DNA of 64,000 nucleotides from Octopus bimaculoides (GCF_001194135.2 NC_068982.1:128712906-128776905); one strand, 5' to 3'. Shown: positions 1 through 64,000, counted from the stretch's first letter. The notes: generated from the letters alone by a model not told the origin. A program made the numbers and translations.

Positions 1-39
1 TTGAGATAACCAGTGGGCCAACAGGTGGAGATGGCACAT
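1..39 (-). CDS. FN3 exon D73, class C, 3'-truncated by window
   Basis: ttttcag|AT GTG CCA TCT CCA CCT GTT GGC CCA CTG GTT ATC TCA = VPSPPVGPLVIS. Confidence 0.8.
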   Translation of the reverse strand, partial: MCHLHLLAHWLSQ

Positions 40-1751
40 CTGAAAATAGACAAATGAAAATAGGAGAAATAAAATATATGAAAAGTGATAAGCGTTACTT
101 TAGATTAAAATGGAGAATAAGCTGAATAGTATACAATTATGTGAAATGTCAATTCATTGGTTTATTTTGTTTTTGCTTACTAAATTTTTTTAACATACCT
201 ATACAGTATGATGAAAGTTATAAATAGAGTGAAGAACCTATTACTTTCAAAGTTTTTATAAGTTCATTGTAATGAGGCAAAAGAGAAGATGAAAATTGAA
301 AAAGATCACTTATATTGGCCATATTTAGAACAATATTCTTATTGTCAAAGCAGATTTAATAGAATTTAAGGTAAATGTTATTTTAATCAGCAAAATGTGT
401 TTTGGGGAAAAAAATGTATAATTCATTATAATGAAATGCAAGTGGAATATAATTTGTTTGAAATAAATTTATATTTGCTGTTCACTACTCTAAAATACTC
501 TTATACTTTTTTTTTAAAGCTGTCATGTTTCAATTACTCCTATTTTACCATGCTTTAAAATAGCTTAGCCTCAATTTGAACTTCATATTTAAGCAATACC
601 TTTTCCTTCTTTCTCATGAAAAAGGAAAATGAAACTAAAAGTAATGCCAAAACTGATCTATCCTTTAATATATCAATTTAATAAAATTGATATATTAAAG
701 GAGAGAGAGGAATGTTCAGTCCAAGAATATAATCTCTTTAGTTCAAAGTTTGTGTAAATATAAATCATCTTCAGTAACTTATCCTAATTTGATAGTGCCA
801 TATTTGTATGTATGTTCTTGTGGAGATAAAATGAGCTATCTTGAGATAATGTGATCAGATGTCCCTTGGTATTTCTGCTCAATTTCTGTTAACTACATCT
901 TACATAGTCTGATAAGATTTCAGGTAGTCTCTTATGGTTAAATTATTTTAATCTATACTTGACTTCAATTCACATTTAATTCAACATTGCTGAAATTTTA
1001 CCAGAGTGTTTAATCCACCAAACATATTTATCTTATTTTCAAGTTTTTTATGCTGTGTATTTTCAATGCTTTTTTGGTTGTGTGCTCTTCTTATCCTCCA
1101 CTGTTCAATATTTTCAATTTATCCATTGTATTTAATTGCTTTCTTATCTGTTCTCTTTTGGTAACATCAGAGCCTATTTTCTATGTTAAGGGTGCTTTCC
1201 TACATTAATTCTATCTACATCAGATTTTCAGTAACATATTCTGAATCCTCTCATAAGTTCCTTATTTTCATGTTCCTCTTTCTTATTTATAATTCAATAC
1301 AATGATACAGTAGCAAATTTATGGGACAACTAGCATGGTTACATTAATTATTTTGCATGCCCTATTTCAATTTCTGAGTATTGCTGAATAGTGGAAGCTA
1401 TAGTCACATAGAGAACCGAACAATATCTACTGACTCTATTTTTCCTTTGGCTTGTAATTTCTGGCAATCTTCTTCCATCTGGATGATATGATGGACTCTA
1501 AGATAGATCGGAGGGCCTAAAGATAGATATTTTATTCCAGGGTTAAACCACTGTCAAGTTGGAGAGGAAGGTAAGGGGGGAAAGAGAGGTGTCACAATCC
1601 AGTAAATTTACTGAATAGTAAGTGACAGTAATCTTCACTACACAATATTTTGTAAGCACAAAAGATTTTATTTTATTTATATATCAACAGTAAAATATCA
1701 ACACCATACTCACAACAAAAATAGAACTAAAATATTTAAAAAGAAACTTAC

Positions 1752-2057
1752 CAAATGGACTACGAGCTAAAGTAGCTGCGTCTGTCTCAAGAGGTGGACT
1801 CTGTCCAATCTTGTTGACTGCAATAACTCTGAAGAGATATTCATTCTTCTCATAAAGGCCTTTAACACACATTTCATATGTTGAAGCATCCACTTGATCT
1901 ACCCTACTCCATATATGGGCTTTAGTATGCTTCTTCTCAACATTGTAAGCAATAATTGGTGAACCACCATCATCCTTTGGTGCCTTCCATTTAATACTGA
2001 TGCTAGTACGTTGGACATCAGTAATGTCAAGAGGACCAGTAGGACATGAAGGTACAG
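1752..2057 (-). CDS. FN3 exon D72, class A
   Basis: VPSCPTGPLDITDVQRT...LARSPF; 306 bp. Confidence 0.9.
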
Positions 2058-2234
2058 CTAAAAAGAACAAGGTAAAAACAATATTTTTAAATTGTTAAAA
2101 AATTAGAATTATGAAAATATTTAATTCTTTAAATTCTTATATATCTTCAGTTATTTTCATAAATATTTTTTATCTATTTCAAATCAATATTTTATGGAAT
2201 ATATCTGTAAATAGGTGTCATTTGAGATACTTAC

Positions 2235-2537
2235 TTGCTTCTCTTGTTGGAACAACAGCTTCAGGAAGTTCAGCAGACTTTCCAGGTCCAACTTTGTTTT
2301 CTGCAGTAACTGAGAAGTAATATTCAGTACCCTCAGTTAAGTCAGGTACACGGCAAGCTGTTTCTTTACCATCAATTGTCATCAGTTTGACCCAATCAGA
2401 TTTCTTATCTTTCCTCATTCTAATAATATATTTGAGAATAGCTGAACCACCGTCATCTTTAGGATGTCTCCATTGAAGATTAACAAAGTTTTTGCCCACT
2501 TTATTAGCCATGAAAGAAACAGGAATTCCAGGAGGCA
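2235..2537 (-). CDS. FN3 exon D71, class B
   Basis: PPGIPVSFMANKVGKNF...VPTREA; 303 bp. Confidence 0.9.
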
Positions 2538-3199
2538 CTAAAAAAGAGAGAAACATTGGTAAATAAATGCAGGTAATGTAAATTGAATACAAACATATAT
2601 AAAAATAAAAATCTTTATTTGTAGTGGAATGTAAAGTCAAAACTTGCATTTACATATGCTCCTTGTCTGTGTGTCTATCTGTCTGTATATCTATCTGTCT
2701 ACACAACTTTCTGATGTTTAAATATGCCTTATAGTCTTCTATTTAAAGGGAGAAAGAGAAACTGACAAAATATATTTCAACACTTATTTTTCTACAAGAC
2801 TACTACAAAGCTATCGCCAAATCCATCTCATTATTAAATGGGTTATTCTGATAGCAGAAGTTATTATCTACTATTTCCATCATTGTATATGATCTGAGCA
2901 GTCCATAAACTTCGATATATAATGTGAGCCATGATGGTAACTACTTCAGTATATTTGGTTCATCAAAAGTTTTGATTTAATGATATCCACAGTTTGTAAT
3001 ATTGTCACAATCGAATTTCATCCTATTCTTTGTAAAAGACACTCAAAGACATTTTTGTACCAACTGTAACTAACCACTATCTTCATCTCTATAAATATAA
3101 CATTCAAATATAATTTTTCAAGTTTCAAATCTCTTCAAATTTGTGTGTGAATATGGAGAATAAATTTACATTCATACATATCAAGTACTGAGCTTATAT

Positions 3200-3785: not shown

Positions 3786-3791
3786 ACTTAC

Positions 3792-4097
3792 TTATTTCTC
3801 TTGTTGGTATTGTTGATTCTGATGTCTCCAAGGGTGGACTTTCTCCTTCCTCATTGACAGCAATCACACGGAAGTAATATTCTGTACCCTCGACTAAACC
3901 TGTAACTCTGGCAACAGTAGATTTAGGATCAACCTCTTCTGCTTTGTTCCAAGACAAACGTGCAGCAGATCTTACTTCAACAACATATTTAGTGATTGGA
4001 GTGCCTCCATCACTGTCCGGAGCTCTCCATTCAAGATCAACATAGTCATAAGAGACTTTGGTAACTTCAAGAGGTCCTTTAGGACGAGATGGTACAC
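3792..4097 (-). CDS. FN3 exon D70, class C' (near-identical to D61)
   Basis: VPSRPKGPLEVTKVSYDYVDL...IPTREI; 306 bp. Confidence 0.9.
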
Positions 4098-4871: not shown

Positions 4872-5177
4872 TGAAAGAGCTCTTGGCCATTGTTGAAGCT
4901 TCAGTCTCTAATGCATCACTGTGACCAATTTTATTGATTGCAGTAACTCTGAAGTCATATTCACAGTTCTGTCTCAGATCCTCAACGCGGTAGTTGGTCA
5001 CTGAGGGTGCTACCTTAGCCACATTGTTCCAGTATTGTCTATTAGCTTCTTTCTTCTCAATAATGTAACCAGTGAGAGGACTACCTCCATCATCTTCTGG
5101 AGCTTTCCAGGAAATGGAAATAGATGTTTTCTCAATATCATAGGTTTTCAGAGGACCAATTGGTTTCGATGGTTTTT
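4872..5177 (-). CDS. FN3 exon D69, class A' (near-identical to D60)
   Basis: KPSKPIGPLKTYDIEKT...MAKSSF; 306 bp. Confidence 0.9.
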
Positions 5178-5279: not shown

Positions 5280-5873
5280 NNNNNNNNNNNNNNNNNNNNN
5301 NNNNNNNNNNNNNNNNNNNNNNNNNNNNNNNNNNNNNNNNNNNNNNNNNNNNNNNNNNNNNNNNNNNNNNNNNNNNNNNNNNNNNNNNNNNNNNNNNNNN
5401 NNNNNNNNNNNNNNNNNNNNNNNNNNNNNNNNNNNNNNNNNNNNNNNNNNNNNNNNNNNNNNNNNNNNNNNNNNNNNNNNNNNNNNNNNNNNNNNNNNNN
5501 NNNNNNNNNNNNNNNNNNNNNNNNNNNNNNNNNNNNNNNNNNNNNNNNNNNNNNNNNNNNNNNNNNNNNNNNNNNNNNNNNNNNNNNNNNNNNNNNNNNN
5601 NNNNNNNNNNNNNNNNNNNNNNNNNNNNNNNNNNNNNNNNNNNNNNNNNNNNNNNNNNNNNNNNNNNNNNNNNNNNNNNNNNNNNNNNNNNNNNNNNNNN
5701 NNNNNNNNNNNNNNNNNNNNNNNNNNNNNNNNNNNNNNNNNNNNNNNNNNNNNNNNNNNNNNNNNNNNNNNNNNNNNNNNNNNNNNNNNNNNNNNNNNNN
5801 NNNNNNNNNNNNNNNNNNNNNNNNNNNNNNNNNNNNNNNNNNNNNNNNNNNNNNNNNNNNNNNNNNNNNNNNN
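5280..5873 (-). other. Assembly gap (594 N) probably hiding class B exon D68
   Basis: Both flanks match the introns flanking D59 (5180-5279 with 11375-11476; 5874-5961 with 11850-11937), and the B-A-C order needs a B exon here. Confidence 0.7.
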
Positions 5874-5961: not shown

Positions 5962-6267
5962 CAATCTTTCTCATTGGTTTTGTGACATCAGTAGATTCAA
6001 GTGGTTTACTTTGTCCTTCAGCGTTAACAGCAAAGACACGGAAATGGTAACTTGTGTCTTCTGTAAGATTTGGTACTGTAAATGTGGTAGTTTTCTCATT
6101 AACAGTGCCTGCTTTAGTCCAGAAGGTTCTGGAATCTACTCTGTGTTCAATAATGTATCCAGTTATTGGTGTACCACCATCATTGGCAGATGGTTTCCAG
6201 CTCAAGTCAGCAGAATTATTGGTGACATTTGTGATCTCCAATGGACCAACTGGTGCAGATGGCACAT
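5962..6267 (-). CDS. FN3 exon D67, class C (near-identical to D58)
   Basis: VPSAPVGPLEITNVTNNSADL...KPMRKI; 306 bp; donor gtgtgt. Confidence 0.88.
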
Positions 6268-6469: not shown

Positions 6470-6775
6470 CAAATGGACTTCTGGCCATTGTAGCATCCCT
6501 AGTTTCCAAAGGTTCACTCTCTCCAATTTTGTTTTCAGCAATCACTCTGAAGTGATACATGGTTCTTTCTTGGAGATCCCTAACACAATAATCTGTGATG
6601 TCAGCACGAACTTTCTCAACCTTTGACCAGTATCGAGCAGACTCGGGACGTTTTTCTATGATGTATCCAATAATAGGAGAACCGCCATCATCAGATGGTG
6701 CTTTCCATTTGATGCTGATAGATTTACGCTGGACATCGGTAACAGTAAGAGGACCAATTGGTTTGGATGGAATTA
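6470..6775 (-). CDS. FN3 exon D66, class A (near-identical to D57)
   Basis: IPSKPIGPLTVTDVQRK...MARSPF; 306 bp; manual translation. Confidence 0.88.
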
Positions 6776-8595: not shown

Positions 8596-8901
8596 CATAA
8601 GGACTTCTTGTGAGTATAGTAGAATCAGACTCAAGTGGGACACTCTGACCAATTGCATTTATGGCCATGACTCTAAATAGGTACTCATTCTTTTCATATA
8701 GATTTCGGACACACATTTCAAATGTTGAGGTATCCACTTGATCAACTCTGCTCCATAACAGTGCTCTGGGATGTTTCTTTTCCACCTTATATCCAATAAT
8801 TGGTGAACCACCATCGTCCTTTGATGCTTTCCATTTAATATTAATGCTGGAACGTTGAACATCAGTGATATCAAGAGGACCAGTTGGTATAGAAGGTACA
8901 G
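8596..8901 (-). CDS. FN3 exon D63, class A
   Basis: VPSIPTGPLDITDVQRS...LTRSPY; 306 bp. Confidence 0.9.
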
Positions 8902-9038: not shown

Positions 9039-9341
9039 TTGCTTCTCTAAGAGGGATGATAGCTTCAGAAATCTCTGCCATCTTGCCAAAACCAGCTTTG
9101 TTTTCAGCACAGACAGCAAAGTAATATTCAATGCCTTCTTTCAAATGTGTTGCTCTGAAACTTCGGCTGCTACCATCAATAGTCACCATAGTTTGCCATT
9201 CACTCTTTCTGTCTTTCCTTGATTTTATTGCATATTTTGTTATCTTAGAACCACCATCATCTTTAGGATGCTTCCATTCAAGATTCACAAAGTCTTTACC
9301 AATCTTTGTAGCCGTAAGATTAACAGGAGGTCCAGGTGGCA
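9039..9341 (-). CDS. FN3 exon D62, class B
   Basis: PPGPPVNLTATKIGKDF...IPLREA; 303 bp. Confidence 0.9.
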
Positions 9342-9487: not shown

Positions 9488-9793
9488 TTATTTCTCTTGT
9501 TGGTATTGTTGATTCTGATGTCTCCAAGGGTGGACTTTCTCCTTCCTCATTGACAGCAATCACACGGAAGTAATATTCTGTACCCTCGACTAAACCTGTA
9601 ACTCTGGCAACAGTAGATTTGGCATCAACTTCTTCTGCTTTGTTCCAAGACATGCGTGCAGCAGATCTTACTTCAACAATATATTTAGTGATTGGAGTGC
9701 CTCCATCACTGTCAGGAGCTCTCCATTCAAGATCAACATAGTCATAAGAGATCTTGGTAACTTCAAGAGGTCCTTTAGGACGAGATGGTACAC
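9488..9793 (-). CDS. FN3 exon D61, class C' (YVDL)
   Basis: VPSRPKGPLEVTKISYDYVDL...IPTREI; 306 bp. Confidence 0.9.
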
Positions 9794-11066: not shown

Positions 11067-11372
11067 TGAAAGAGCTCTTGGCCATTGTTGAAGCTTCAGT
11101 CTCTAATGGCTCACTGTGACCAATTTTATTGATTGCTGTAACTCTGAAGTCATATTCACAGTTCTGTCTCAGATCCTCAACGCGGTAGTTGGTCACTGAA
11201 GGTGCTACCTTAGCCACATTGTTCCAGTATTGTCTATTAGCTTCTTTCTTCTCAATAATGTAACCAGTGAGAGGACTACCTCCATCATCTTCTGGAGCTT
11301 TCCAGGAAATGGAAATAGATGTTTTCTCAATATCATAGGTTTTCAGAGGACCAATTGGTTTCGATGGTTTTT
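11067..11372 (-). CDS. FN3 exon D60, class A'
   Basis: KPSKPIGPLKTYDIEKT...MAKSSF; 306 bp. Confidence 0.9.
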
Positions 11373-11492: not shown

Positions 11493-11798
11493 CAAGAGAT
11501 CTCATTGGTGTAACTGCATATTCTGCATTACAGTAAGGACTTAGACCAGCTTTATTCTCAGCTTGAATACAGAAGTAGTAGGACAAATTCTGTTTCAAGT
11601 CTCTCAAATGACAACTATGTTCATAAGCTGAAATAGTTTTCACTTTAGTCTTCACATCAGATGATGTACCACCCATTTCAGATAAGATGTAATTGGTGAT
11701 TTTAGAACCTCCATCTGAAAGTGGTTTCTTCCATTCCAAGACTGCAAAGTCAGGACCAACTTGTGTAGCTCTGAAGTAAATTGGTGGACTTGGTGGTT
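11493..11798 (-). CDS. FN3 exon D59, class B
   Basis: PPSPPIYFRATQVGPDF...PMRSL; 306 bp. Confidence 0.9.
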
Positions 11799-11937: not shown

Positions 11938-12243
11938 CAATCTTTCTCATTGGTTTTGTGACATCAGTAGATTCAAGTGGTTTACTTTGTCCTTCAGCGT
12001 TAACAGCAAAGACACGGAAATGGTAGCTTGTGTCTTCTGTAAGATTTGGTACTGTAAATGTGGTAGTTTTCTCATTAACAGTGCCTGCTTTAGTCCAGAA
12101 GGTTCTGGAATCTACTCTGTGTTCAATAATGTATCCAGTTATTGGTGTACCACCATCATTGGCAGATGGTTTCCAGCTCAAGTCAGCAGAATTATTGGTG
12201 ACATTTGTGATCTCCAACGGACCAACTGGTGCAGATGGCACAT
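11938..12243 (-). CDS. FN3 exon D58, class C
   Basis: VPSAPVGPLEITNVTNNSADL...KPMRKI; 306 bp; donor gtgagt. Confidence 0.9.
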
Positions 12244-12526: not shown

Positions 12527-12832
12527 CATATGGACTTCTGGCCATTGTAGCATCCCTAGTTTCCAAAGGTTCACTCTCTCCAATTTTGTTTTCAGCAATC
12601 ACTCTGAAGTGATACATGGTTCTTTCTTGGAGATCCCTAACACAACAATCTGTGGTGTCAGCACGAACTTTATCGACCTTTGACCAGTATCGAGCAGACT
12701 CGGGACGTTTTTCTATGATGTATCCAGTAATAGGAGAACCGCCATCATCAGATGGTGCTTTCCATTTGATGCTGATAGATTTACGCTGGACATCGGTAAC
12801 AGTAAGAGGACCAATTGGTTTGGATGGAACCA
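12527..12832 (-). CDS. FN3 exon D57, class A
   Basis: VPSKPIGPLTVTDVQRK...MARSPY; 306 bp. Confidence 0.9.
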
Positions 12833-13010: not shown

Positions 13011-13313
13011 ACAGGCCTTTCTTAGTTGTAATTGCTTTTGGTGTTGTAGCTGGAGGACTGACACCAATATCATTCTCAGCTGTGACTCTAAAGAAATAAT
13101 CCATGTTTTCATCAAGCTTCATTGCTTTACAATAAGTTTCAAGTGAAGAAACTTTGGTGAGTTTGACCCATTTGTCTGGTTCTCCTGAGGAAATTTCAAC
13201 GTTATAAGTTCTGATTGGAGTACCTCCATTGTTAACTGGAGGATTCCATTCTAATTCTATGAAATTTTCGCCAATTCTTGCTGCTCGTAAGTTAACTGGA
13301 GCATCAGGAATAG
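13011..13313 (-). CDS. FN3 exon D56, class B
   Basis: IPDAPVNLRAARIGENF...TKKGL; 303 bp. Confidence 0.9.
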
Positions 13314-13823: not shown

Positions 13824-14129
13824 TTAATTTCTTCATTGGTTTTATTAGTTCTTTCGATTCAAGAGGTCGACTGTTTCCTTCAGAGTTCACGGCTATTACA
13901 CGGAAATAGTATTCTGTTCCTGGGATCAGGTCTTTAGCAGTAAATTTAGTTGTATGTGCATCAACTGTACCTGCTTTAGACCAGGTGCTTCGGGTTACTG
14001 ATCTATATTCAATCAGATAACCTGTAATAGGAGAGCCACCATCTTTTTCGGAAGGTTTCCATTCAAGATCTGCTGTATGCTCTGTGACTCCATCAATTAT
14101 TAATGGGCCAACAGGAGGAGATGGAACAT
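13824..14129 (-). CDS. FN3 exon D55, class C (absent from the ORF track)
   Basis: Manual translation VPSPPVGPLIIDGVTEHTADLEWKPSEKDGG...KPMKKL; 306 bp, no stops. Confidence 0.88.
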
Positions 14130-15236: not shown

Positions 15237-15542
15237 CACGAGGACTTCGTGCTAATGTTGCTCCCTCATCTTCCAGAGGAACACTCTCTCCAACATTGTT
15301 TACAGCAATAACTCGGAACAAATATTCAGTTTTCTCAAACAGCTTTTCACAGCAATACTGCAAGGTATTTGCTGTAACTTGTTCCATTCTATTCCAAAGG
15401 AATGATGATGGATGCTTTTTCTCTACTATGTAACCAACAATTGGTGTGCCACCATCATTCTTAGGTGACTTCCATTTGATTGTGATGGAAGTTCGTTGTA
15501 CATCAATGATATCAAGAGGTCCAGTTGGTGCAGAAGGAACAC
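15237..15542 (-). CDS. FN3 exon D54, class A
   Basis: VPSAPTGPLDIIDVQRT...LARSPR; 306 bp. Confidence 0.9.
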
Positions 15543-16441: not shown

Positions 16442-16744
16442 TCATTTCCCGGGTTGGCACAATAGCATCTGTAGTTTCACAGAGTTTTCCAGGTCCAGCT
16501 TTATTTTCAGCAAAAACACTGAAGTAGTAAGGAGTGCCTTCTTTCAAACTGGTAACGAGATTAGATGTGTCCACACCATCCACTGATGTAACACGAGTCC
16601 AGTCATCAGTGCGATTTTTCTTCTGTTGTACAATATATCTTGTAATCTTGCTGCCACCATCATCTCTTGGTGGTCGCCATTCAAGTTGCACAAAGTCACA
16701 GCCAATCTTAGTAGCATGTAAGTTGATAGGAGGTCCTGGAGGAA
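16442..16744 (-). CDS. FN3 exon D53, class B
   Basis: PPGPPINLHATKIGCDF...VPTREM; 303 bp. Confidence 0.9.
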
Positions 16745-46044: not shown

Positions 46045-47871
46045 CTGGTACTCTAGTTGGGATAGTAACATCAGTAGCTTCTAAACGTTGGCTTTGTCCT
46101 TCAGCATTGACAGCAATGACACCAAAGATATATTCAGTGCCTTCGGATAATCCAGAAACTGTAAAATCTTTTACTTTTTCACCAACTGTACCACACTTTG
46201 TCCAAGTGGATCTGGAAGCTACCTTGTGTTCAATTATGTATCCTGTTATTGGTGATCCACCATCATCTTTAGGTGCTTTCCAGTGAAGGTCAGCACTGTT
46301 ACGAGTGACATTATCTACATCAAGTGGGCCAATAGGAATAGAAGGTGGGTTGAAAGGACTTTTAGCAAGAGTGGCATCATTAGTCTCTAATGGTGGTCCT
46401 TTTCCAACTTTGTTTTCAGCTGTTACTCTGAAATAGTATTCAGTTTTTTCTGTAAGATTTCCAATCTTTAGTTGAGTTGTTAATTCATCAACTTTGCTAA
46501 CTTTAGTCCACTTGGAGCTTGAAGCTTCTCGTTTTTCTACAGTATAGCCAGTCACTGGAGAACCACCATCATCCTTTGGAGGTTCCCATTTAATGCTAAT
46601 TGAATTACGCTGAACATCTGTCACAGCAATTGGTCCAATGCATTTGCCTGGTACTGTTGCTGCCTTCTTTGGTATAACTGGTTTTGCTGTTTCTGCAATT
46701 TCACCTTGGCCAACTTTATTTTCAGCTGCAACAGCGAAATAGTACTCTGTGTTTTCCTTAAGATTTGGTATTTTATAAAATGAATCAAATTCTTTCAGGG
46801 TAACTACTTTTGTAAAATCACCTGTTTTCTTCTCTCGCTTGAATAGGATATAATTTGTAATTGGAGAGCCACCATCACTTTTAGGTGGATGCCATTCAAT
46901 TACAGCAAAATCTTCTCCAACCTTAGTTGGTTCAACTGATCTTGGAGGACCAGGAGGTGAGAGCTTTCTAGTTGGCTTAGTAATGTCTGTTGCTTCAAGT
47001 GGAGGGCTCTTCCCTTCAGCATTTATTGCAATAACACGGAACAAATATTCTGTATCTTCAATTAGCTTTTTAACTGTAAATTGAGTAGTTTTACCATCCA
47101 CAGTGCCAGCTTTTGACCAAGTGGATCTGCCGACAGTTTTTACTTCAATAAGATACTCAGTAATGCTAGAACCACCATCAGATTTTGGTGGTTTCCACTC
47201 AAGATCTGCAGTATTCATAGTTACATTTGTAACTTCTAGTGGTCCCAGAGGTGCTGATGGAACATCAAATGGGCTCTTAGCTAAAGTAGCTCCTTCTGTT
47301 TCTAGTGGCTCACTCTGACCAATTTTATTCACTGCAATTACTCTAAAATGATAGGATGTCTTCTCTCTCAAATTTGGACAGCAAAGCTGTGTAGTGTTTG
47401 AATCAACAGTCTCTACTTTGGACCAATAAGTCTTATTCTCTTCTCGCTTCTCAACAATATAACCTGTAATAGGTGAGCCTCCATCCTGAGTTGAAGGTTT
47501 CCATTTGATAGTTATAGAGTTACATTGAACATCAATAACTTCAATAGGTCCAACAGGTTTGGAAGGTGGAGTTGGTTCCTTTTTCAGAATAATAGGTTCT
47601 GCCATCTCACAGGGTATACTGATGCCAGCTTTATTCTTTGCAAAGACAGAGAAATAATATGGTACTTCTTCTTTCAGACGGTTAACTTTCAATGATGTGT
47701 CATAATCAGAAACAGTGCTTTCAATTTCCCAATCACCTTTCTTCTCTTTCTTTTTAATGATGTATTCTGTGATAGGAGATCCTCCATCAGACTTAGGAGG
47801 AGACCAATTCAAAACTACAAAGTTAGCACCAACTTTAGAAGGTTTGAGATCAATTGGTGGGCCAGGAGGAC
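46045..47871 (-). CDS. Six-domain intronless FN3 exon D17-D22 (B-A-C-B-A-C)
   Basis: 1,827 bp = 609 codons, open throughout (603-aa ORF in the track); acceptor ...cattgaaaag|GT CCT CCT GGC, donor CCA G|gtatgt. Confidence 0.92.
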
Positions 47872-48334: not shown

Positions 48335-48640
48335 TTATCTTCTTCCGAGGTATCGTGACATCTTTAGCTTCTAAAGGCTCACTGCGTCCTTCAGCATTTA
48401 CTGCAACAACTCGGAACAAATATTCAGTATTCTCAATTAGATCTGAAGCAGTATATTTTGTTACATCAGGGCCTACAGTACCACATTTGACCCATGTTTT
48501 GCTATCAGTTGGCCTAAATTCAATGATGTAATTGGTGATTGGAGTACCACCATCACTTTCAGATGGTTTCCATTCTAAATCAGCAGAATCATGTGTAACA
48601 TTGCTGATTTCCAAAGGTCCTTTTGGTTTAGAAGGAACGT
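48335..48640 (-). CDS. FN3 exon D16, class C (P[KR]GPL subtype)
   Basis: VPSKPKGPLEISNVTHDSADL...IPRKKI; 306 bp. Confidence 0.9.
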
Positions 48641-49137: not shown

Positions 49138-49443
49138 CAAATGGACTTCGAGCCAATGTAGCATCTTTGGTTACAAGTGGTTCACTCTTTCCAATTTTAT
49201 TAACAGCAAAAACTCGGAAATGATATTCAGTTTTCTCAGTCAGATACTTGCAACAAAGTGCAGTAGTAAACTGATCAACTTTTCCAGCTTTAGTCCAGAC
49301 TGTGCTTGAATTTTCTCGTTGTTCAATAATGTAACCAGTAATGGGAGAACCACCATTGTCTTCAGGTTCCTTCCATTTAATGCTAATAGAATCCCTTTGA
49401 ACGTCAGTGACTTCAATAGGGCCTTGACATTTTCCTGGTACAG
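49138..49443 (-). CDS. FN3 exon D15, class A (absent from the ORF track)
   Basis: Manual translation VPGKCQGPIEVTDVQRD...LARSPF; 306 bp; donor gtatgt. Confidence 0.88.
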
Positions 49444-49940: not shown

Positions 49941-50240
49941 TTGGTTCTCTTTGTGGCACAATTTTCTTGGTTTCTGCAGTTGGGCCAACACCGGCACTAT
50001 TTTCAGCACACACAGAGAAATAATGATCAACATTTTCCTTGAGACCTTTAATCTTGTATGTGAAATCAGTTTCCTTAAGAGATGCAACATCTTCCCAGTC
50101 ACCAGTAGAACGTATTTTCTTTTTCAAGTGATAACCTGTAACTTTAGATCCACCATCATCTTTTGGTGCTTTCCATTGCAGGGTGACAAAGTCTTGTCCG
50201 ATTTTGTCAGCATGGAAGTTAACAGGTGCACTGGGAGGTT
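49941..50240 (-). CDS. FN3 exon D14, class B
   Basis: PPSAPVNFHADKIGQDF...VPQREP; 300 bp. Confidence 0.9.
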
Positions 50241-50397: not shown

Positions 50398-50703
50398 GGA
50401 TTTTCTTTGTGGGTTTTGTAGTATCAGTTGCTTCTAAATAGGGGCCTTGACCTTCAGCATTCACTGCAGTGACACGGAAAAGATATTCTGTTCCTTCTAA
50501 AAGTTTAGTTGCTGTAAATGTCAATGTTTTGCCATCTACAGTACCACATTTTGACCATGAAGTTCTTGTTAGTGTTTTACTTTCAATGATATAGTTAATA
50601 ATGGGAGTGCCACCATCAGATTTAGGAACTTTCCATTCTAAGTCAGCAGTGCTTTCAGTGACGTTACTGATTTCCAGAGGACCAATTGGTGCAGATGGAA
50701 CAT
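50398..50703 (-). CDS. FN3 exon D13, class C
   Basis: VPSAPIGPLEISNVTESTADL...KPTKKI; 306 bp. Confidence 0.9.
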
Positions 50704-51958: not shown

Positions 51959-52264
51959 CAAATGGACTCTTTGCAAGAGTTGCTTCTTTTGTTTCTAATG
52001 GCTCACTTTGTCCAACACTGTTTACAGCAAATACCCGGAAGAAGTATTCAGTCTTTTCAGTTAGTTTTTTGCAACACAAGTCAAAAGTTATCTCATCAAC
52101 TTTATCTACTGATGTCCATACAGTACTGTTTGCTGGGCGTTTTTCAATTATATAGCCTGTGATAGGTGAATTGCCATCACTTTTGGGGGCTTTCCATCTG
52201 ATGCTGATAGAGTTTCGCTGAACATCAGTGACTTCAATAGGTCCAAGAGGTGGTGAAGGTACAG
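51959..52264 (-). CDS. FN3 exon D12, class A
   Basis: VPSPPLGPIEVTDVQRN...LAKSPF; 306 bp. Confidence 0.9.
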
Positions 52265-52932: not shown

Positions 52933-53235
52933 TTGCGGCAGCCTTAGGAATAACTGCTTTGTCTGTGATTGCTTCTTTACCAATACCAGCTTTGTTCTCA
53001 GCAGAGACTGCAAAGAAATGTTCAACATTCTCTTGCAGTTTAGGTATTTTGGCTTTTGTGTCAAAAGCATCAACTGTTTCAACTTTCACCAAATCTCCAG
53101 TTCTTTTAATTCTTTTGAAAATGTGGTAATGTGTTACAGGAGAACCTCCATTCTGTTTTGGTGGTGACCAGGTGATTGAAGCAAAGTCTTTTCCAACTTC
53201 GACAACCTCCAAATTAACTGGCGGACCTGGTGGTC
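52933..53235 (-). CDS. FN3 exon D11, class B
   Basis: PPGPPVNLEVVEVGKDF...IPKAAA; 303 bp. Confidence 0.9.
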
Positions 53236-53791: not shown

Positions 53792-54097
53792 CTATACGTG
53801 CTGTACATTTTGTTACATCATCTGCTTCCAGTGGAGGACTCTGTCCTTCTGCATTGACAGCAATGACTCTGAACCAATACTCAGTACCTTCTTCAAGGGC
53901 CATTGCAGTATAAGTTGTTGTTTTTCCATTTACACTGCTGAGTTTTTTCCATCCAGTGCAATATGAAGGTTTAATCTCAATAATGTAACTTGTAATAGGT
54001 GTACCACCATCCTCTTTGGGTGGCTTCCATTCAAGATCAGCAGAATTTGTGGTGACATTTTTGATCTCAAGAGGACCAATTGGAATTGATGGGCAAT
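53792..54097 (-). CDS. FN3 exon D10, class C
   Basis: CPSIPIGPLEIKNVTTNSADL...KCTARI; 306 bp; AAG acceptor. Confidence 0.88.
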
Positions 54098-54608: not shown

Positions 54609-54914
54609 CAAAAGGACTTTTAACTAAGGTTGCTTCCTTTGTTTCCAAAGGAGGACTTTGGCCAACTTTGTTAACAGCAATCACTCTGAAATGATATTTG
54701 GTTTTCTCAGTAAGATGGGTTGCAGTGTAGGTTAAAGTGGAGTCATTGACTTTGCCAGCCTTTGTCCAATTTGTTATAGATTCTTCTCTATATTCAATGA
54801 TATAGCCTGTAATTGGTGAACCACCATCATTTTCAGGTTCTTTCCATTTGATAGATATGGCATCACGTTTGACATCTGTAACTTCAATGGGACCAACACA
54901 CATTGATGGGACTT
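54609..54914 (-). CDS. FN3 exon D9, class A
   Basis: VPSMCVGPIEVTDVKRD...LVKSPF; 306 bp. Confidence 0.9.
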
Positions 54915-56074: not shown

Positions 56075-56374
56075 TTGGCTTTTTCACAAGAGTGATCTTT
56101 TTCGATTCACATGAATCGCTTATTCCAGCTTCATTTTCAGCAAAAACAGCAAAATAGTAATCAGTATCAGGTTCAGCATTTTTCAGTTTATACTTCCTGT
56201 CATATTCATCAATTTTGGCAACATCTTCCCATTTGTCACTAGCTTTGTGTTTCTTTTTAAGAATATATTGGGTGATCTTTGATCCACCATCATTCTTAGG
56301 TGGTTGCCACTCAAGTTCAATGAAATCTTCACCCGTTTTAGTTGGTTTCAAATTAATCGGTGGTCCTGGTCGGG
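56075..56374 (-). CDS. FN3 exon D8, class B
   Basis: RPGPPINLKPTKTGEDF...LVKKP; 300 bp. Confidence 0.9.
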
Positions 56375-56760: not shown

Positions 56761-57066
56761 CAATTTTCTTTTTAATAATGGTTGTATCAGCAGCCTCCAA
56801 TGGCTCGCTTTTACCTTCTGCATTGACTGCTATCACTCTAAACTGATATTCTGTTCCTGCTGATAGATCAGGCACTGTAAATGTTGTAGATTTACCATCA
56901 ACACTGCCAGTTTTAGACCAAGATGATCGTGAAGCTTGTTTATACTCAATGATATAGCTAGTAATTGGTGTTCCGCCATCACTTTCTGAAGGTTTCCATC
57001 GAAGATCAGCAGAGTTTGATGTAACATCAGTTACCTCAAGAGGTCCTCTTGGTTTTGAAGGAACAT
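56761..57066 (-). CDS. FN3 exon D7, class C (P[KR]GPL subtype)
   Basis: VPSKPRGPLEVTDVTSNSADL...IKKKI; 306 bp. Confidence 0.9.
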
Positions 57067-58322: not shown

Positions 58323-58628
58323 CAAATGGACTTCTTGCAAGAGTAGTATCTTTGGTTTCTAAAGGTTCACTTTGGCCAATCTTATTGACAGCAATTACTC
58401 TAAACAGATATTCTGTTTTCTCAGTAAGGTATGGGCAACGTAATTTTGTAGTACTTTCATCCACTTTTTCAACTCGTTGCCATTTCATTTGAGCTGGTTC
58501 CTTCCTTTCTACTATGTAGCCAGTGATGGGAGAACCACCATCATCTTCAGGCATTTTCCACTGAATTGTGATGTTATCTCGTTGGACATCAATGACATCA
58601 ATAGGTCCCACAGGTTTGCCAGGGGCAG
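58323..58628 (-). CDS. FN3 exon D6, class A
   Basis: APGKPVGPIDVIDVQRD...LARSPF; 306 bp; donor gttagt. Confidence 0.9.
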
Positions 58629-59478: not shown

Positions 59479-59778
59479 TTGGTTCTCTTTTTGGTACTAC
59501 TTTCTCTGTTTCTGCCGCTGGACCAACACCAGCACTATTTTCAGCACATACAGAGAAGTAATGCTCAACATTTTCCTTGAGGCCTTTAACTTTGTAGGTC
59601 AATTCAAATTCACTAGTGGTGGCCACTTTCTCCCAATCACCAGTTGCCTTTATTTTCTTTTTCAAGTGGTAAGCTGTAACCTTGGAACCTCCATCAACTT
59701 TTGGTGCCTTCCATTGCAGAGTAGCAAAATCTGCACCAACTTTGTCAACAGTAAACTTGATTGGTGGACCAGGAGGCT
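59479..59778 (-). CDS. FN3 exon D5, class B
   Basis: PPGPPIKFTVDKVGADF...VPKREP; 300 bp. Confidence 0.9.
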
Positions 59779-60435: not shown

Positions 60436-60587
60436 AATGTTCAGATTAAATGATACTTTTAAATCACCATGCCTGATTGACTGGCATTATAGGCAAAAAC
60501 TAATAGGAATAAGAATTATTGCAGGGAAATGGTGCTGTTAGTCAATGTTTTAAATAGGAATAAAGAAGAACATTAAATCTGTCTTAC

Positions 60588-60893
60588 CAATTTTTCTAGT
60601 TGGTTTGGTTGTATCAGTAGCTTCAAGAGGAGCTCCGACACCTTCATCATTTACAGCACTAACACGGAAAATGTATTCTGTATCTTCCAGCAAACCAGTT
60701 GCAGTGAAAGTTAATGTTTTACCATCAACATTGCCACATTTTCCCCATGTTGATCTGGTTGCTGTCCTGTTTTCAATAATATAACCTGTGATAGGAAGAC
60801 CACCATCACTTTTAGGTTTCTTCCATTCAAGATCAGCAGAGTTTATAGTGACATTGCTTATTTCCAAAGGTCCAATAGGAGCTGATGGAACAG
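60588..60893 (-). CDS. FN3 exon D4, class C
   Basis: VPSAPIGPLEISNVTINSADL...KPTRKI; 306 bp. Confidence 0.9.
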
Positions 60894-62219: not shown

Positions 62220-62519
62220 AGTATGGACTCTTGGGAGTAACTGCCTCACTTTCCAAAGGAGGACTTTTTCCAATTTTGTTAACAGCAGTAACTCTGAAGA
62301 AATATTCTGTGTTCTCAGTCAGTCTTGGCACATGAAGCTTGGTAATATTTCCCTCAACTTCATCAACAATAGTCCATCGGCCATATTTGTCTTTCTTTTC
62401 AACAATGTAACTGGTAATTGGTGAACCACCAGTGTCTTTTGGAGGCTTCCAATCAAGATCCACAGATGTCTTTTGAATATTAGTGACATTAAGTGGACCA
62501 AGTGGACTGGATGGAGCAG
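62220..62519 (-). CDS. FN3 exon D3, class A
   Basis: APSSPLGPLNVTNIQKT...TPKSPY; 300 bp. Confidence 0.9.
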
Positions 62520-63265
62520 CTGTAAATAAATATAATGTAATTAATTATATGACATACCTATAAATTAAGTTTATTATTCACATCGTTACTTAAACCTTTG
62601 CAGTAAATTTTTTTTTAATCCTTAGATTCAGATCATAATAGATTTTTTTTTATATATTCATATGTAAATAGACATTTGTTTAAACTAAACTATTTAACAA
62701 ATTCATTCACCCCAGCCATATAAGGTTATTTACTTTAGTATTGAGGCGTACAAACTGATACTTTACAATTAAATTATAAATTGTCATCATTCAGAGGTGT
62801 AGTGTTGTAATCTGTTTCTCAGTTTAACACCACTAGCTGGCTCTTGAGTACTGTTAACAGAGTAAATTCAATTGCAATCTTGGGGGCCAGAAAACTTATT
62901 TGAGAATAACTTCTTCCTACATGTCAGATCAACTGAATGACCTTTTCTTTCAATTAACATGCAAAATGGCTGAACATTCTGTGCCCTTTATGTAATTCCC
63001 AAGTAGAATCAGTGTGACAAGACTTGACCACTAAATTAAAGGCACAATCCATTCGATGGGCTTTCACACAGTTTCTGTCTTCTTAATTTCACTTACAAGG
63101 CTTGGTTTGACCTGTTTTCATCCAAGTTTTCAGTCTCAAATTAATTGCATCAATACTATTCATTAAACAATAGCTTTCTGATTATTCTTATCCTAAAGAA
63201 TCTATAAAGTCCGTACAAGAATCTATTAAGTCATTAACTCTCAAAACATATTTTAAAATACTTAC

Positions 63266-63565
63266 ATGGTGGCCTAGAGGGAACAATTGCATCTCTTGTT
63301 TCACAAGGTTCACTGACCCCAACTGCATTTTGTGCAGAAACAGCAAAGTAATAGCCAATATCTTTAAGGTTGTTTACTCGGTAAGTGAGATTGAATGCTT
63401 TTGTTGTGCCAATCTTCTCAAAAACATCAGATTTTTCTTCGCATAATTCCAGAACATAGTTAGTCAAAGGACTGCCACCATCTTTCAATGGTGGTTCCCA
63501 TGATAATACAACATAATCAATACCAACATCTGTTCCTTTAAGGTTGACTGGTGGATCAGGTGGAT
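63266..63565 (-). CDS. FN3 exon D2, class B
   Basis: [14 protein letters not shown]...VPSRPP; 300 bp, AG/GT, phase 1. Confidence 0.9.
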
Positions 63566-63885
63566 CTGAAATGCATATTAATGTTTATAGAATCAATGAA
63601 AGATTGATGATCATATAAAGGTATATTAACTAACATATGTGTAATTAGTCATAATATAAATACATTTATCATAAGTGAGGTAACGAAATACATCTCAATC
63701 AAAAACATTATTTCTTAATGAACATGAGTACCTAAAGAAATATGTCAGACTTACAAAGTCCTTAAAATGTTCATAATATTGCCATTAAAATATTAGCATT
63801 AAATTGATGTATAATAATATCTATAAATAACTTTCTATCTTTTGTGCTCTTGCACATCTATACTATCAACAAAAAGTGTACTCAC

Positions 63886-64000
63886 TCATCTTTTTCATAG
63901 GTTTGATTGTTGCTTCAGCTTCCAAAGGTGGACTTTGCCCTTGATCATTAACAGCTATAACCCGGAATAAGTATTCAGTTCCTTCAATGAGATCTAAAGC
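63886..64000 (-). CDS. FN3 exon D1, class C, 5'-truncated by window
   Basis: Manual translation ...LIEGTEYLFRVIAVNDQGQSPPLEAEATIKPMKKM; donor gtgagt. Confidence 0.88.

What the first reader, a model, noticed from the sequence alone, without database searches (positions are those of the whole stretch)
1..64000. Unbroken three-class B-A-C domain cycle repeated about 24 times
Seen: class B starts PPGPP.N....KVG.[DN]F and has YYF[AS]V.AENK.G. Class A starts P..P.GP..V.DVQR.SI.IKW and ends A[KR]SP[FY]. Class C starts VPS.P.GPL.I.NVT..SADL.W and ends KP.[RK]K[IL]. The order never slips, including inside the six-domain exon. Inference: the triplet is the structural unit and may be an Fn-Fn-Fn counterpart of the twitchin/projectin Fn-Fn-Ig module. 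From memory, the class A ending resembles the AKNPF ending of twitchin FN3 domains.
Basis: partly seen in the sequence, partly recalled or inferred. Interest (0 to 1): 0.72.

Follow-up and report, generated by a model that had tools for sequence, protein, structure and literature searches.

The report
FN3-only super-repeat of titin-like gene
The whole window is the middle of one giant titin-family muscle gene, probably molluscan, built only of fibronectin-type-III domains in a strict three-domain cycle nested in a nine-domain super-repeat; this Ig-free layout appears undescribed.

Summary
On the minus strand, 66 exons with AG/GT splice sites, all in phase 1-1, encode 70 complete FN3 domains and one cut by the window end. 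Spliced together they give 7,244 codons with no stop. Domain class follows position modulo 3 without exception. Each class is one clade (bootstrap B 199, A 151, C 162 of 200), and the nearest neighbour is of the same class in 70 of 70.

Four assembly gaps lie in introns. The fifth (5280-5873) hides the one expected class-B exon, so "unbroken" cannot be verified there.

A nine-domain super-repeat lies on top of the triplet. From d31 to the 3' end, every domain's best match is 9, 18, 27 or 36 domains away (40 of 40).

The copies are old (dS saturated) and under purifying selection. A related species keeps the six-domain exon intact (omega 0.10).

The closest relatives are titin A-band FN3 domains, especially the A84-A86 triplet. 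Gastropod orthologues place the same cycle between an Ig-rich part and a part with Ig, FN3 and a kinase.

The best reading is the thick-filament-type region of a titin-family protein. It is a new variant of a known kind. Whether class C replaces twitchin's Ig is unresolved.

The parts
63886..64000 (-). 3-prime part of an exon cut by the window end: C-terminal third of FN3 d00, class C
   Evidence: HMM positions 66-101, 37.7 bits; donor GT at 63885
63266..63565 (-). exon, 300 nt, phase 1-1: FN3 d01, class B
62220..62519 (-). exon, 300 nt, phase 1-1: FN3 d02, class A
60588..60893 (-). exon, 306 nt, phase 1-1: FN3 d03, class C
59479..59778 (-). exon, 300 nt, phase 1-1: FN3 d04, class B
58323..58628 (-). 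exon, 306 nt, phase 1-1: FN3 d05, class A
56761..57066 (-). exon, 306 nt, phase 1-1: FN3 d06, class C
56075..56374 (-). exon, 300 nt, phase 1-1: FN3 d07, class B
54609..54914 (-). exon, 306 nt, phase 1-1: FN3 d08, class A
53792..54097 (-). exon, 306 nt, phase 1-1: FN3 d09, class C
52933..53235 (-). exon, 303 nt, phase 1-1: FN3 d10, class B
51959..52264 (-). exon, 306 nt, phase 1-1: FN3 d11, class A
50398..50703 (-). exon, 306 nt, phase 1-1: FN3 d12, class C
49941..50240 (-). exon, 300 nt, phase 1-1: FN3 d13, class B
49138..49443 (-). exon, 306 nt, phase 1-1: FN3 d14, class A
48335..48640 (-). exon, 306 nt, phase 1-1: FN3 d15, class C
46045..47871 (-). six-domain exon, 1827 nt, phase 1-1: FN3 d16-d21, classes B-A-C-B-A-C
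   Evidence: intact in related species, omega 0.098
45474..45776 (-). exon, 303 nt, phase 1-1: FN3 d22, class B
44891..45196 (-). exon, 306 nt, phase 1-1: FN3 d23, class A
44275..44580 (-). exon, 306 nt, phase 1-1: FN3 d24, class C
43251..43544 (-). exon, 294 nt, phase 1-1: FN3 d25, class B
42165..42470 (-). exon, 306 nt, phase 1-1: FN3 d26, class A
40805..41110 (-). exon, 306 nt, phase 1-1: FN3 d27, class C
40218..40520 (-). exon, 303 nt, phase 1-1: FN3 d28, class B, super-repeat position 7 of 9
39724..40029 (-). exon, 306 nt, phase 1-1: FN3 d29, class A, super-repeat position 8 of 9
38862..39167 (-). exon, 306 nt, phase 1-1: FN3 d30, class C, super-repeat position 9 of 9
37467..37769 (-). 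exon, 303 nt, phase 1-1: FN3 d31, class B, super-repeat position 1 of 9
36719..37024 (-). exon, 306 nt, phase 1-1: FN3 d32, class A, super-repeat position 2 of 9
35823..36128 (-). exon, 306 nt, phase 1-1: FN3 d33, class C, super-repeat position 3 of 9
34314..34616 (-). exon, 303 nt, phase 1-1: FN3 d34, class B, super-repeat position 4 of 9
33404..33709 (-). exon, 306 nt, phase 1-1: FN3 d35, class A, super-repeat position 5 of 9
32025..32330 (-). exon, 306 nt, phase 1-1: FN3 d36, class C, super-repeat position 6 of 9
30458..30754 (-). exon, 297 nt, phase 1-1: FN3 d37, class B, super-repeat position 7 of 9
29784..30089 (-). exon, 306 nt, phase 1-1: FN3 d38, class A, super-repeat position 8 of 9
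28615..28920 (-). exon, 306 nt, phase 1-1: FN3 d39, class C, super-repeat position 9 of 9
27415..27717 (-). exon, 303 nt, phase 1-1: FN3 d40, class B, super-repeat position 1 of 9
26582..26887 (-). exon, 306 nt, phase 1-1: FN3 d41, class A, super-repeat position 2 of 9
26185..26490 (-). exon, 306 nt, phase 1-1: FN3 d42, class C, super-repeat position 3 of 9
25384..25686 (-). exon, 303 nt, phase 1-1: FN3 d43, class B, super-repeat position 4 of 9
24211..24513 (-). exon, 303 nt, phase 1-1: FN3 d44, class A, super-repeat position 5 of 9
23545..23850 (-). exon, 306 nt, phase 1-1: FN3 d45, class C, super-repeat position 6 of 9
22657..22959 (-). exon, 303 nt, phase 1-1: FN3 d46, class B, super-repeat position 7 of 9
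21523..21828 (-). exon, 306 nt, phase 1-1: FN3 d47, class A, super-repeat position 8 of 9
20524..20829 (-). exon, 306 nt, phase 1-1: FN3 d48, class C, super-repeat position 9 of 9
19931..20233 (-). exon, 303 nt, phase 1-1: FN3 d49, class B, super-repeat position 1 of 9
18281..18586 (-). exon, 306 nt, phase 1-1: FN3 d50, class A, super-repeat position 2 of 9
17216..17521 (-). exon, 306 nt, phase 1-1: FN3 d51, class C, super-repeat position 3 of 9
16442..16744 (-). exon, 303 nt, phase 1-1: FN3 d52, class B, super-repeat position 4 of 9
15237..15542 (-). exon, 306 nt, phase 1-1: FN3 d53, class A, super-repeat position 5 of 9
13824..14129 (-). exon, 306 nt, phase 1-1: FN3 d54, class C, super-repeat position 6 of 9
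13011..13313 (-). exon, 303 nt, phase 1-1: FN3 d55, class B, super-repeat position 7 of 9
12527..12832 (-). exon, 306 nt, phase 1-1: FN3 d56, class A, super-repeat position 8 of 9
11938..12243 (-). exon, 306 nt, phase 1-1: FN3 d57, class C, super-repeat position 9 of 9
11493..11798 (-). exon, 306 nt, phase 1-1: FN3 d58, class B, super-repeat position 1 of 9
11067..11372 (-). exon, 306 nt, phase 1-1: FN3 d59, class A, super-repeat position 2 of 9
9488..9793 (-). exon, 306 nt, phase 1-1: FN3 d60, class C, super-repeat position 3 of 9
9039..9341 (-). exon, 303 nt, phase 1-1: FN3 d61, class B, super-repeat position 4 of 9
8596..8901 (-). exon, 306 nt, phase 1-1: FN3 d62, class A, super-repeat position 5 of 9
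   Evidence: spliced to d63 in database protein P0184
8001..8303 (-). exon, 303 nt, phase 1-1: FN3 d63, class C, super-repeat position 6 of 9
   Evidence: spliced to d62 in database protein P0184
6922..7224 (-). exon, 303 nt, phase 1-1: FN3 d64, class B, super-repeat position 7 of 9
6470..6775 (-). exon, 306 nt, phase 1-1: FN3 d65, class A, super-repeat position 8 of 9
5962..6267 (-). exon, 306 nt, phase 1-1: FN3 d66, class C, super-repeat position 9 of 9
5280..5873 (-). assembly gap where the exon of FN3 d67 (class B, super-repeat position 1 of 9) is expected; not readable
   Evidence: flanks 98% identical to 11061-11474 and 11850-12271, which bracket exon 11493-11798; the 3-cycle and the 9-register need one domain here
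4872..5177 (-). exon, 306 nt, phase 1-1: FN3 d68, class A, super-repeat position 2 of 9
3792..4097 (-). exon, 306 nt, phase 1-1: FN3 d69, class C, super-repeat position 3 of 9
2235..2537 (-). exon, 303 nt, phase 1-1: FN3 d70, class B, super-repeat position 4 of 9
1752..2057 (-). exon, 306 nt, phase 1-1: FN3 d71, class A, super-repeat position 5 of 9

Best explanation
The window is an internal stretch of at least 7,244 codons of one giant titin-family muscle gene, on the minus strand. The organism is most likely a mollusc; the species was not determined.

**Shown**
- Seventy-one or seventy-two titin-type FN3 domains follow one another at a pitch of 100-102 residues, with no linkers and no Ig domain.
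- Nearly every domain has its own exon, and every exon is in phase 1-1.
- The domains form three old sequence classes in a fixed cycle B-A-C. In the 3' 60% of the window, three different triplets make a nine-domain super-repeat, present in five copies.
- The array grew by tandem duplication of exon blocks long ago: synonymous sites between copies are saturated. It has been held since under purifying selection that keeps each position's class.

**Inferred**
- By analogy with titin's A-band super-repeats, and from gastropod orthologues, the array is the thick-filament-associated part of the protein. In those orthologues the same cycle lies between an Ig-rich N-terminal part and a C-terminal part with Ig, FN3 and a protein kinase.
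- On this reading it is a stiff chain of beads lying along the myosin/paramyosin filament. It would offer a different binding surface every third domain, and a variant set every ninth, in register with a periodicity of the filament.
- Which periodicity that is remains unknown.
For: **A real, working gene**
- 66 exons, all with AG/GT sites and all in phase 1-1.
- No stop in 7,244 spliced codons.
- The orthologous contig of a related species is colinear at 91-92% nucleotide identity. Its six-domain exon is intact, with dS 0.154, dN 0.015 and omega 0.098.
- The database protein P0184 equals d62 and d63 spliced exactly as predicted.

**Period 3**

**Period 9**
- Identity at lag 9 is 0.658 against 0.530 for shuffled order (0 of 5000). 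It is still 0.606 against 0.523 without the recently converted block.
- The best match lies at a multiple of 9 in 40 of 40 domains from d31 to d71.
- Super-repeat positions 1, 2 and 3 are clades with bootstrap 111, 188 and 195 of 200.

**Old copies under constraint**
- Pairs at lag 9 have dS above 1, dN 0.15-0.64 and omega mostly 0.1-0.4.

**Family**
- The best solved relatives by sequence are titin chains in cardiac thick-filament maps: 8g4l (E 4e-145) and 8q6t. MyBP-C and myomesin follow, and the best extracellular FN3 protein is far behind at E 4e-22.
- The AlphaFold model of a triplet (pLDDT 93.5) matches the titin A84-A86 FN3 triplet 8bnq best (TM 0.58, 32% identity), then titin in the filament maps.

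**Context in orthologues**
- Lottia gigantea scaffold KB200919.1 has at least 12 Ig domains, then Ig-Fn-Fn-Fn blocks, then an FN3-only A-C-B cycle of about 40 domains. It is crisp for the first 16 or so and degenerate beyond.
- In Haliotis rubra the same cycle bridges a 6,483-residue model rich in I-set domains and a 3,937-residue model with fn3, Ig and Pkinase. All lie on one strand, and both models start or end inside the array.

**Argument for selection on the order**
- Every exon is symmetric, so losing or skipping a single exon would keep the reading frame. Even so, no slip occurs in 71 positions.
Against: - No Ig, kinase or gene end lies in the window. The link to a kinase-bearing titin-like protein rests on gastropod loci and automatic gene models, not on this organism.
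- Nothing here shows expression in muscle or binding to a filament.
- At titin's pitch of about 3.9 nm per domain (from memory: 11 domains per 43 nm), three domains span about 12 nm and nine about 35 nm. Neither equals the 14.3-14.5 nm crown spacing or its threefold.
- The nine-domain period is weak in the 5' 40% of the window: 0.593 against 0.555 for shuffled order (3 of 5000), with the best match at a multiple of 9 in 17 of 30.
- It was not seen in the parts of the Lottia and Haliotis arrays that could be read. There the higher order looks like six domains.
- AlphaFold does not predict a fixed arrangement of the three domains (pTM 0.53).
Confidence: 0.62

Rival explanations
1. The periodicity is only history. 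A founder block of three exons, later of nine, was copied in tandem, and the order persists because nothing has disturbed it. The triplet and the nonamer then have no structural or functional meaning beyond 'many FN3 beads'.
For: - Tandem block duplication is certainly how the array arose.
- One block (d56-d60 against d65-d69) is still nearly identical, with dS 0.015-0.07.
- The higher-order period differs between lineages: nine here, about six in Haliotis and Lottia.
- AlphaFold sees no fixed inter-domain packing.
Against: - Copies have saturated dS, yet each position keeps its class signature, with omega mostly 0.1-0.4.
- The three classes and their cyclic order are shared with gastropods at only 38-58% identity.
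- All exons are in phase 1-1, so loss of a single exon would be tolerated by the reading frame, yet none is seen in 71 positions.
Confidence: 0.2
2. The FN3 array is an extensible or tethering segment of the protein. It would act as a spring or connecting filament between thick filaments and dense bodies or Z-structures, rather than as a filament-bound scaffold.
For: - No direct evidence places it on the thick filament.
- The protein is very long, and the array has no interruptions that would mark binding partners.
- The predicted domains are independent beads.
Against: - From established knowledge of the family, elastic parts of titin-family proteins are built of Ig domains and PEVK-like sequence. 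They show low position-specific conservation and heavy alternative splicing, whereas FN3 domains are confined to filament-bound regions.
- Here, position-specific classes are conserved.
- The nearest relatives are the filament-bound titin C-zone domains.
Confidence: 0.1
3. It is an extracellular FN3-repeat protein of the tenascin, usherin, contactin or receptor-phosphatase kind.
For: - Pfam also gives weaker hits to DSCAM-type and other extracellular FN3 models.
- Class C carries a recurrent N-V-T, which reads like a glycosylation sequon.
Against: - Titin chains score E 4e-145, against 4e-22 for the best extracellular protein.
- The D-G-G-x-P-I-x-x-Y motif and the N/D-V-T motif are shared with the FN3 that follows the Ig in twitchin-type modules.
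- The orthologous loci carry I-set domains and a kinase.
Confidence: 0.03
4. The regularity is an assembly artefact, with haplotypes or collapsed repeats stitched in tandem, or the locus is a dead array.
For: - There are five N gaps. One is inside a 98%-identical block.
- A perfect 134-bp direct repeat flanks exon d25.
Against: - Apart from one block of five domains, copies differ by dS above 1.
- An independent assembly of a related species is colinear over 4.4 kb.
- There are no stops in 7,244 codons and omega is 0.098.
Confidence: 0.02

Closest known systems
Titin A-band super-repeats (vertebrate C-zone, 11 domains: Ig-Fn-Fn-Ig-Fn-Fn-Fn-Ig-Fn-Fn-Fn), including the Fn3 triplet A84-A86 (PDB 8bnq)
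   Same: - The FN3 subtype is the same. Titin chains are the best solved relatives by sequence, and 8bnq is the best by fold.
- Domains abut without linkers at about 100 residues.
- There is a hierarchical super-repeat in which each position has its own conserved sequence type.
- One domain per symmetric exon.
   Different: - There is no Ig at all in 71-72 consecutive domains.
- The periods are 3 and 9 instead of 7 and 11.
- Only three basic sequence classes occur.
- The register of B, A and C against titin positions is ambiguous.
Twitchin / projectin Fn-Fn-Ig modules
   Same: - Both have a three-domain period.
- Class A resembles the FN3 that follows the Ig, including the ...PLET...AK(N/S)PF ending. 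Class B resembles the FN3 that precedes the Ig, including the one-residue shorter N-terminal segment.
   Different: - The third member is an FN3, not an Ig.
- In twitchin the two FN3 types are neighbours; here C lies between A and B.
- Molluscs have a separate twitchin with Ig and FN3 domains (Mytilus twitchin: 24 Ig and 15 FN3, as cited in PMC12040844), so this is not expected to be twitchin.
Uncharacterised gastropod gene models: Lottia gigantea LOTGIDRAFT_141638, 141610 and 141663; Haliotis rubra 'titin-like' on QXJH01000091.1; Elysia chlorotica EGW08_013891
   Same: - They show the same three FN3 classes in the same cyclic order in genomic DNA.
- They have one domain per exon.
- They have Ig-rich sequence upstream and, in Haliotis, a kinase-bearing part downstream.
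   Different: - Identity is only 38-58%.
- In the parts read, the higher-order period looks like six, with crisp and divergent triplets alternating, rather than nine.
- All are fragmentary automatic models with no published description that I could find.
MyBP-C and myomesin (thick-filament and M-band Ig/FN3 proteins)
   Same: They have muscle-type FN3 domains and are the next-best solved relatives after titin.
   Different: They are short proteins with mixed Ig and FN3 domains and no long periodic array.

Membership tests
Titin/twitchin family of giant sarcomeric Ig-FN3 kinases | FN3 domains of the intracellular muscle subtype (closest to titin A-band domains) | tested here: met
   Titin chains 8g4l and 8q6t score E 4e-145 and 7e-141, against 4e-22 for the best extracellular protein. 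Titin and twitchin are the best named hits after the molluscan orthologues. The best fold match is the titin A84-A86 triplet.
Titin/twitchin family of giant sarcomeric Ig-FN3 kinases | I-set Ig domains in the same polypeptide | tested here: inconclusive
   There is none in the 64-kb window in any frame. Ig domains are present upstream of the same FN3 cycle in Lottia and Haliotis. The ends of this organism's gene are outside the window.
Titin/twitchin family of giant sarcomeric Ig-FN3 kinases | Ser/Thr kinase domain near the C-terminus | tested here: inconclusive
   It is not in the window. In Haliotis rubra, the 3,937-residue gene model that starts inside the array carries Pkinase. This is an automatic model in another species.
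Titin/twitchin family of giant sarcomeric Ig-FN3 kinases | Position-specific super-repeat of domains | tested here: met
   Period 3 throughout and period 9 from d31 to d71.
Titin/twitchin family of giant sarcomeric Ig-FN3 kinases | Location in the sarcomere and binding to thick filaments | not testable with these tools
   This needs expression, localisation or binding data.
Twitchin/projectin Fn-Fn-Ig module | Repeating unit of two FN3 domains followed by one Ig | tested here: not met
   All three members are FN3, and there is no Ig in the window.
Twitchin/projectin Fn-Fn-Ig module | Two FN3 types, one after the Ig (ending AKNPF) and one before it, adjacent to each other | tested here: inconclusive
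   A is like the FN3 after the Ig in 23 of 24 domains, and B like the FN3 before it in 23 of 23. They are not adjacent in that order, because C lies between them. Mapping against titin gives the opposite register.
Titin C-zone 11-domain super-repeat | Eleven domains with Ig at positions 1, 4 and 8 | tested here: not met
   The period is 9, with no Ig.
Extracellular FN3-repeat proteins (fibronectin, tenascin, contactins, receptor phosphatases) | Closest relatives among extracellular FN3 domains; signal peptide or other extracellular modules | tested here: not met
   Extracellular proteins rank far below titin, MyBP-C and myomesin. No other module lies in the window. The N-terminus is not available.

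The most novel reading that the evidence does not exclude
Molluscs carry a titin-family protein whose filament-bound region has dropped Ig domains altogether. It uses a 3-in-9 FN3 super-repeat as a ruler or template tuned to a periodicity of paramyosin-cored thick filaments. That would be a second, independently evolved solution beside the vertebrate 7- and 11-domain super-repeats. A speculative example, using values from memory: 18 domains at about 4 nm span the 72.5-nm paramyosin repeat.
Probability: 0.25. Interest if true: 0.75.

Novelty: new variant of a known kind. Interest (0 to 1): 0.5.

Why it matters
Titin's A-band super-repeats are the main argument that a giant protein can act as a ruler or template for the thick filament. 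Their 11-domain period matches the 43-nm myosin repeat.

An independent array from a phylum with very different thick filaments would give a natural second case to test that idea. Those filaments have a paramyosin core, variable length and catch properties. This array has a different domain alphabet (FN3 only) and different periods (3 and 9 here, apparently 6 in gastropods).

The test would ask whether the period of the protein tracks a period of the filament across lineages. The array also offers a clean system for asking what distinguishes FN3 classes that sit at different positions: 23-24 paralogues per class, old and under purifying selection.

If the period is merely historical, the finding is an ordinary, if tidy, example of exon-block amplification in a giant gene.

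Tried and rejected
**Structure prediction**
- An alignment of single-exon rows (A2) put all classes onto the C domain and was not used.
- The model finally used rests on a shallow 13-row alignment.

**Identifying the organism**
- The closest contigs come from Logan runs SRR11869384 and SRR11869385, which carry no name here.
- The protein databases seem to return only proteins up to about 1,100 residues, so the organism's own giant model, if any, was not seen.

**Orthologues**
- The Littorina orthologue (P0003) is not on record for a context look-up.

**Nine-position profiles in gastropods**
- Run on the Lottia array, they gave no 1-to-9 order. Conservation of the nonamer outside this lineage is therefore not shown.
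- The exception is the unnamed protein P0030, which reads positions 8-9-1-2.

**Register against titin**
- Three triplet registers and three class consensus queries against PDB sequences gave no consistent answer.

**Literature**
- Five searches for a description of an FN3-only titin-like array in molluscs, or of the Lottia gene models, found none.

**Readings considered and rejected**
- Extracellular FN3 protein, pseudogene and whole-array assembly artefact; see the rival explanations.

Full report
**What is in the window.** The window has 32% G+C and five runs of N. All long stop-free stretches that look like protein lie on the minus strand. A profile built from the six-domain exon finds 71 FN3 matches, all on the minus strand: 70 complete and one cut by the window end at 63887-63994. 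Pfam confirms fn3 for examples of each class. A profile of muscle-type Ig domains finds nothing in any frame, and there are no FN3 matches on the plus strand.

**Exon structure.** Each of the 65 complete exons starts after a polypyrimidine tract and AG, and ends before GT, mostly GTAAGT-like. Each is a multiple of 3 long: 294-306 nt, or 1827 nt for the six-domain exon at 46045-47871. Each is in phase 1-1. Joining all exons, with a placeholder for the one in the gap, gives 7,244 codons without a stop. Domains follow each other every 100-102 residues, so there are no linkers.

**The gaps (tested first, as asked).** Four gaps (10179-10471, 31463-31577, 35175-35184, 41789-41798) lie inside introns, at least 367 nt from the nearest exon. 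The two 10-N gaps sit in microsatellites. The class cycle and the nine-register continue across all four without a slip.

The gap at 5280-5873 lies between a class-C exon (5962-6267) and a class-A exon (4872-5177), exactly where a class-B domain is due. Its flanks, 4866-5279 and 5874-6297, are 98.6% and 97.9% identical to 11061-11474 and 11850-12271. Those regions enclose 375 nt that include the class-B exon 11493-11798. One exon fits, but it cannot be read.

**The three-class cycle.** I numbered the domains d01 to d71 in gene direction, with d67 in the gap.
- Identity within a class is 0.526 against 0.360 between classes. No shuffle in 2000 reached that difference.
- Identity peaks at every lag that is a multiple of 3 (about 0.51 against 0.36).
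- The nearest neighbour is of the same class in 70 of 70 domains, and all average-linkage clusters are pure.
- In a neighbour-joining tree each class is one clade, with bootstrap B 199, A 151 and C 162 of 200.
- A and C are closer to each other (0.43) than either is to B (0.32-0.33). B also lacks one residue in the N-terminal segment.
The five longer ones are class-specific; the short C ending is specific only when exact.

**A nine-domain super-repeat (not in the finding).** Lag 9 stands out above lags 3 and 6.
- Identity at lag 9 is 0.62 overall and 0.66 for d31-d71, against 0.49 at lags 3 and 6. There are further peaks at lags 18, 27 and 36.
- From d31 to d71, every domain's best match lies 9, 18, 27 or 36 domains away (40 of 40).
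- Shuffling the order within classes never reaches the observed value (0 of 5000). This still holds after the recently converted block is removed (0.606 against 0.523).
- The first triplet of each nonamer is a distinct variant. Its B is rich in R/K-E-K. Its A starts KPSKP and has E-Y-[DE]-F-R-V. Its C has V-S-[HY]-[ND]-Y-V-D-L and a net charge of about -5. These three positions are clades with bootstrap 111, 188 and 195 of 200.
- In d01-d30 the nine-period is weak: 0.593 against 0.555, reached by 3 of 5000 shuffles.

**Age and selection.** Between copies nine domains apart, synonymous sites are saturated (dS above 1). dN is 0.15-0.64 and omega mostly 0.1-0.4.

The exception is d56, d57, d59 and d60 against d65, d66, d68 and d69, with dS 0.015-0.07. 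Here similarity also covers the intron flanks near the exons. This is a recent conversion or duplication, or an assembly problem, and it lies around the unread exon.

A contig from a related organism (Logan SRR11869385) is colinear with 48706-44300 at 91-92% nucleotide identity, introns included. Its six-domain exon has no stop or indel, with dS 0.154, dN 0.015 and omega 0.098. A 184-residue database protein (P0184) equals d62 joined to d63 through the predicted junction codon.

**Family.** Database hits are molluscan hypothetical proteins made only of FN3 (Lottia, Littorina; 36-46% identity), then titin and twitchin from many animals.
- By sequence, the best solved relatives are titin chains in the human and mouse cardiac thick-filament maps (8g4l, E 4e-145; 8q6t). 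The titin FN3 triplet 8bnq comes next, then A77-A78, MyBP-C and myomesin. Extracellular FN3 proteins come far behind.
- An AlphaFold model of d16-d18 is confident per domain (pLDDT 93.5) but not in the mutual arrangement of the domains (pTM 0.53).
- Its best fold match is titin A84-A86 (TM 0.58, 32% identity), followed by titin in the filament maps.

**Context in other molluscs.**
- *Lottia.* In scaffold KB200919.1, the genomic DNA itself, independent of gene models, shows at least 12 Ig domains. Three Ig-Fn-Fn-Fn blocks follow, then an FN3-only run in the order A-C-B. The run is crisp for about 16 domains and continues for at least 24 more, with some divergent members.
- *Haliotis rubra.* The same cycle, with crisp and divergent triplets alternating, bridges two gene models on one strand. 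One is a 6,483-residue model rich in I-set domains. The other is a 3,937-residue model with fn3, Ig and Pkinase.
- *Distribution.* A profile search with the triplet, followed by class scoring, finds crisp B, A and C only in molluscan or unnamed proteins.
- *P0030.* An unnamed 405-residue protein, not encoded in the window, reads as nonamer positions 8-9-1-2 with wide margins.

**Relation to the Fn-Fn-Ig module.** From 85 modules in the hits I built profiles of the FN3 after the Ig (F1) and the FN3 before the Ig (F2).

Class A scores higher with F1 in 23 of 24 domains (+10 bits). Class B scores higher with F2 in 23 of 23 (-12.5 bits). Class C leans weakly to F1 in 18 of 23 (+3 bits). On that mapping the Ig slot, between B and the next A, is empty, and C is an additional A-like domain.

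Against titin the picture differs. The B consensus best matches super-repeat domain 2 and A77. The A and C consensuses best match domain 9 (A84) and A78. B-A aligns to A77-A78 better than A-C does (124.5 against 113 bits). That mapping would put C in the Ig slot. I therefore leave the register open.

**How it most likely works.**
- *Shown:* a long, linker-free chain of muscle-type FN3 domains with position-specific sequence classes, kept by purifying selection in a 3-in-9 hierarchy.
- *Inferred:* from titin, whose FN3-rich super-repeats lie on the thick filament, and from the gastropod gene layout, this is the filament-bound part of a titin-family protein. It would present periodically varying surfaces to myosin or paramyosin.
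- *Caveat:* the match to a particular filament spacing is not established. At titin's pitch (from memory, 11 domains per 43 nm), 3 and 9 domains give about 12 and 35 nm, not 14.5 and 43.5 nm.

**Literature.** I found no paper describing an FN3-only array or a B-A-C cycle in a molluscan titin-like protein, and none citing the Lottia models. The library is incomplete, so this is absence in what could be searched.

**Verdict.** The feature is a new variant of a known kind, a titin-family super-repeat without Ig and with periods 3 and 9. It is of moderate interest, which would rise if the period proves to track thick-filament geometry.

Noticed in passing
window 3786-6814 versus 9482-12871: Five consecutive domains (d56-d60) and their counterparts one super-repeat later (d65-d69) are 94-99% identical in DNA, including the intron flanks next to the exons (dS 0.015-0.07). 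The neighbouring pairs d55/d64 and d61/d70 are saturated. This is a recent gene conversion or duplication, or an assembly problem. The 594-N gap lies inside it.
   Followed up: partly
window 42889-43022 and 43608-43741: A perfect 134-bp direct repeat, 719 bp apart, flanks exon d25 (43251-43544). It could be a very recent local duplication or an assembly artefact. It does not change the exon count.
   Followed up: no
window 35310-35814 and 51080-51589: Two intronic copies of a roughly 510-bp element are 82% identical. It is probably a dispersed repeat.
   Followed up: no
window 60240-60440 (minus strand): An intronic element holds a 38-bp unit repeated twice (GGATGCCCTTCCTAACACC...) and is followed by ...GCATGGAAAGCAGACGTTAAACGA and a GAT-rich tail. 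It looks like a SINE. From memory it resembles an abundant repeat of octopus genomes, which would point to a cephalopod. This was not tested.
   Followed up: no
window 35086-35240, 41799-41843, 33178-33260, 7598-7730: Long microsatellites are present: (AGA)51, (TA)22, (GA)41 and (TATG)33. The two 10-N gaps sit directly in or beside the first two, so those gaps are probably repeat-induced breaks within introns.
   Followed up: partly
L001 2851-4198 versus window 45819-45824: The related species has about 1.35 kb of extra sequence in the intron after the six-domain exon. It is an insertion there or a deletion here.
   Followed up: no
proteins P0184 and P0030: P0184 (184 residues, MetaClust, no organism given) is identical to d62 and d63 of this window, spliced. 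P0030 (405 residues, UniParc UPI0006951A40) is not encoded in the window, but reads as nonamer positions 8-9-1-2 at about 57% identity. Further super-repeats therefore exist outside the window or in a relative.
   Followed up: partly
L003, L004 (Lottia) and L006 (Haliotis): In gastropods the B-A-C cycle alternates between crisp triplets and triplets whose B (and sometimes C) is divergent. That gives an apparent six-domain higher order instead of nine.
   Followed up: partly
class A domains d11, d14, d17, d26, d29, d35, d53, d56 (for example window 47267-47569): A pair of adjacent cysteines (L-C-C or Y-C-C) recurs at the same position of many class-A domains, mostly in the 5' half. The meaning is unknown.
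   Followed up: no
class C domains, super-repeat position 3 (d33, d42, d51, d60, d69): Net charge differs by class: B +1.1, A +0.8, C -2.5. It is most negative, about -5, in the variant C at position 3 of the nonamer. The chain may therefore carry a periodic charge pattern.
   Followed up: partly
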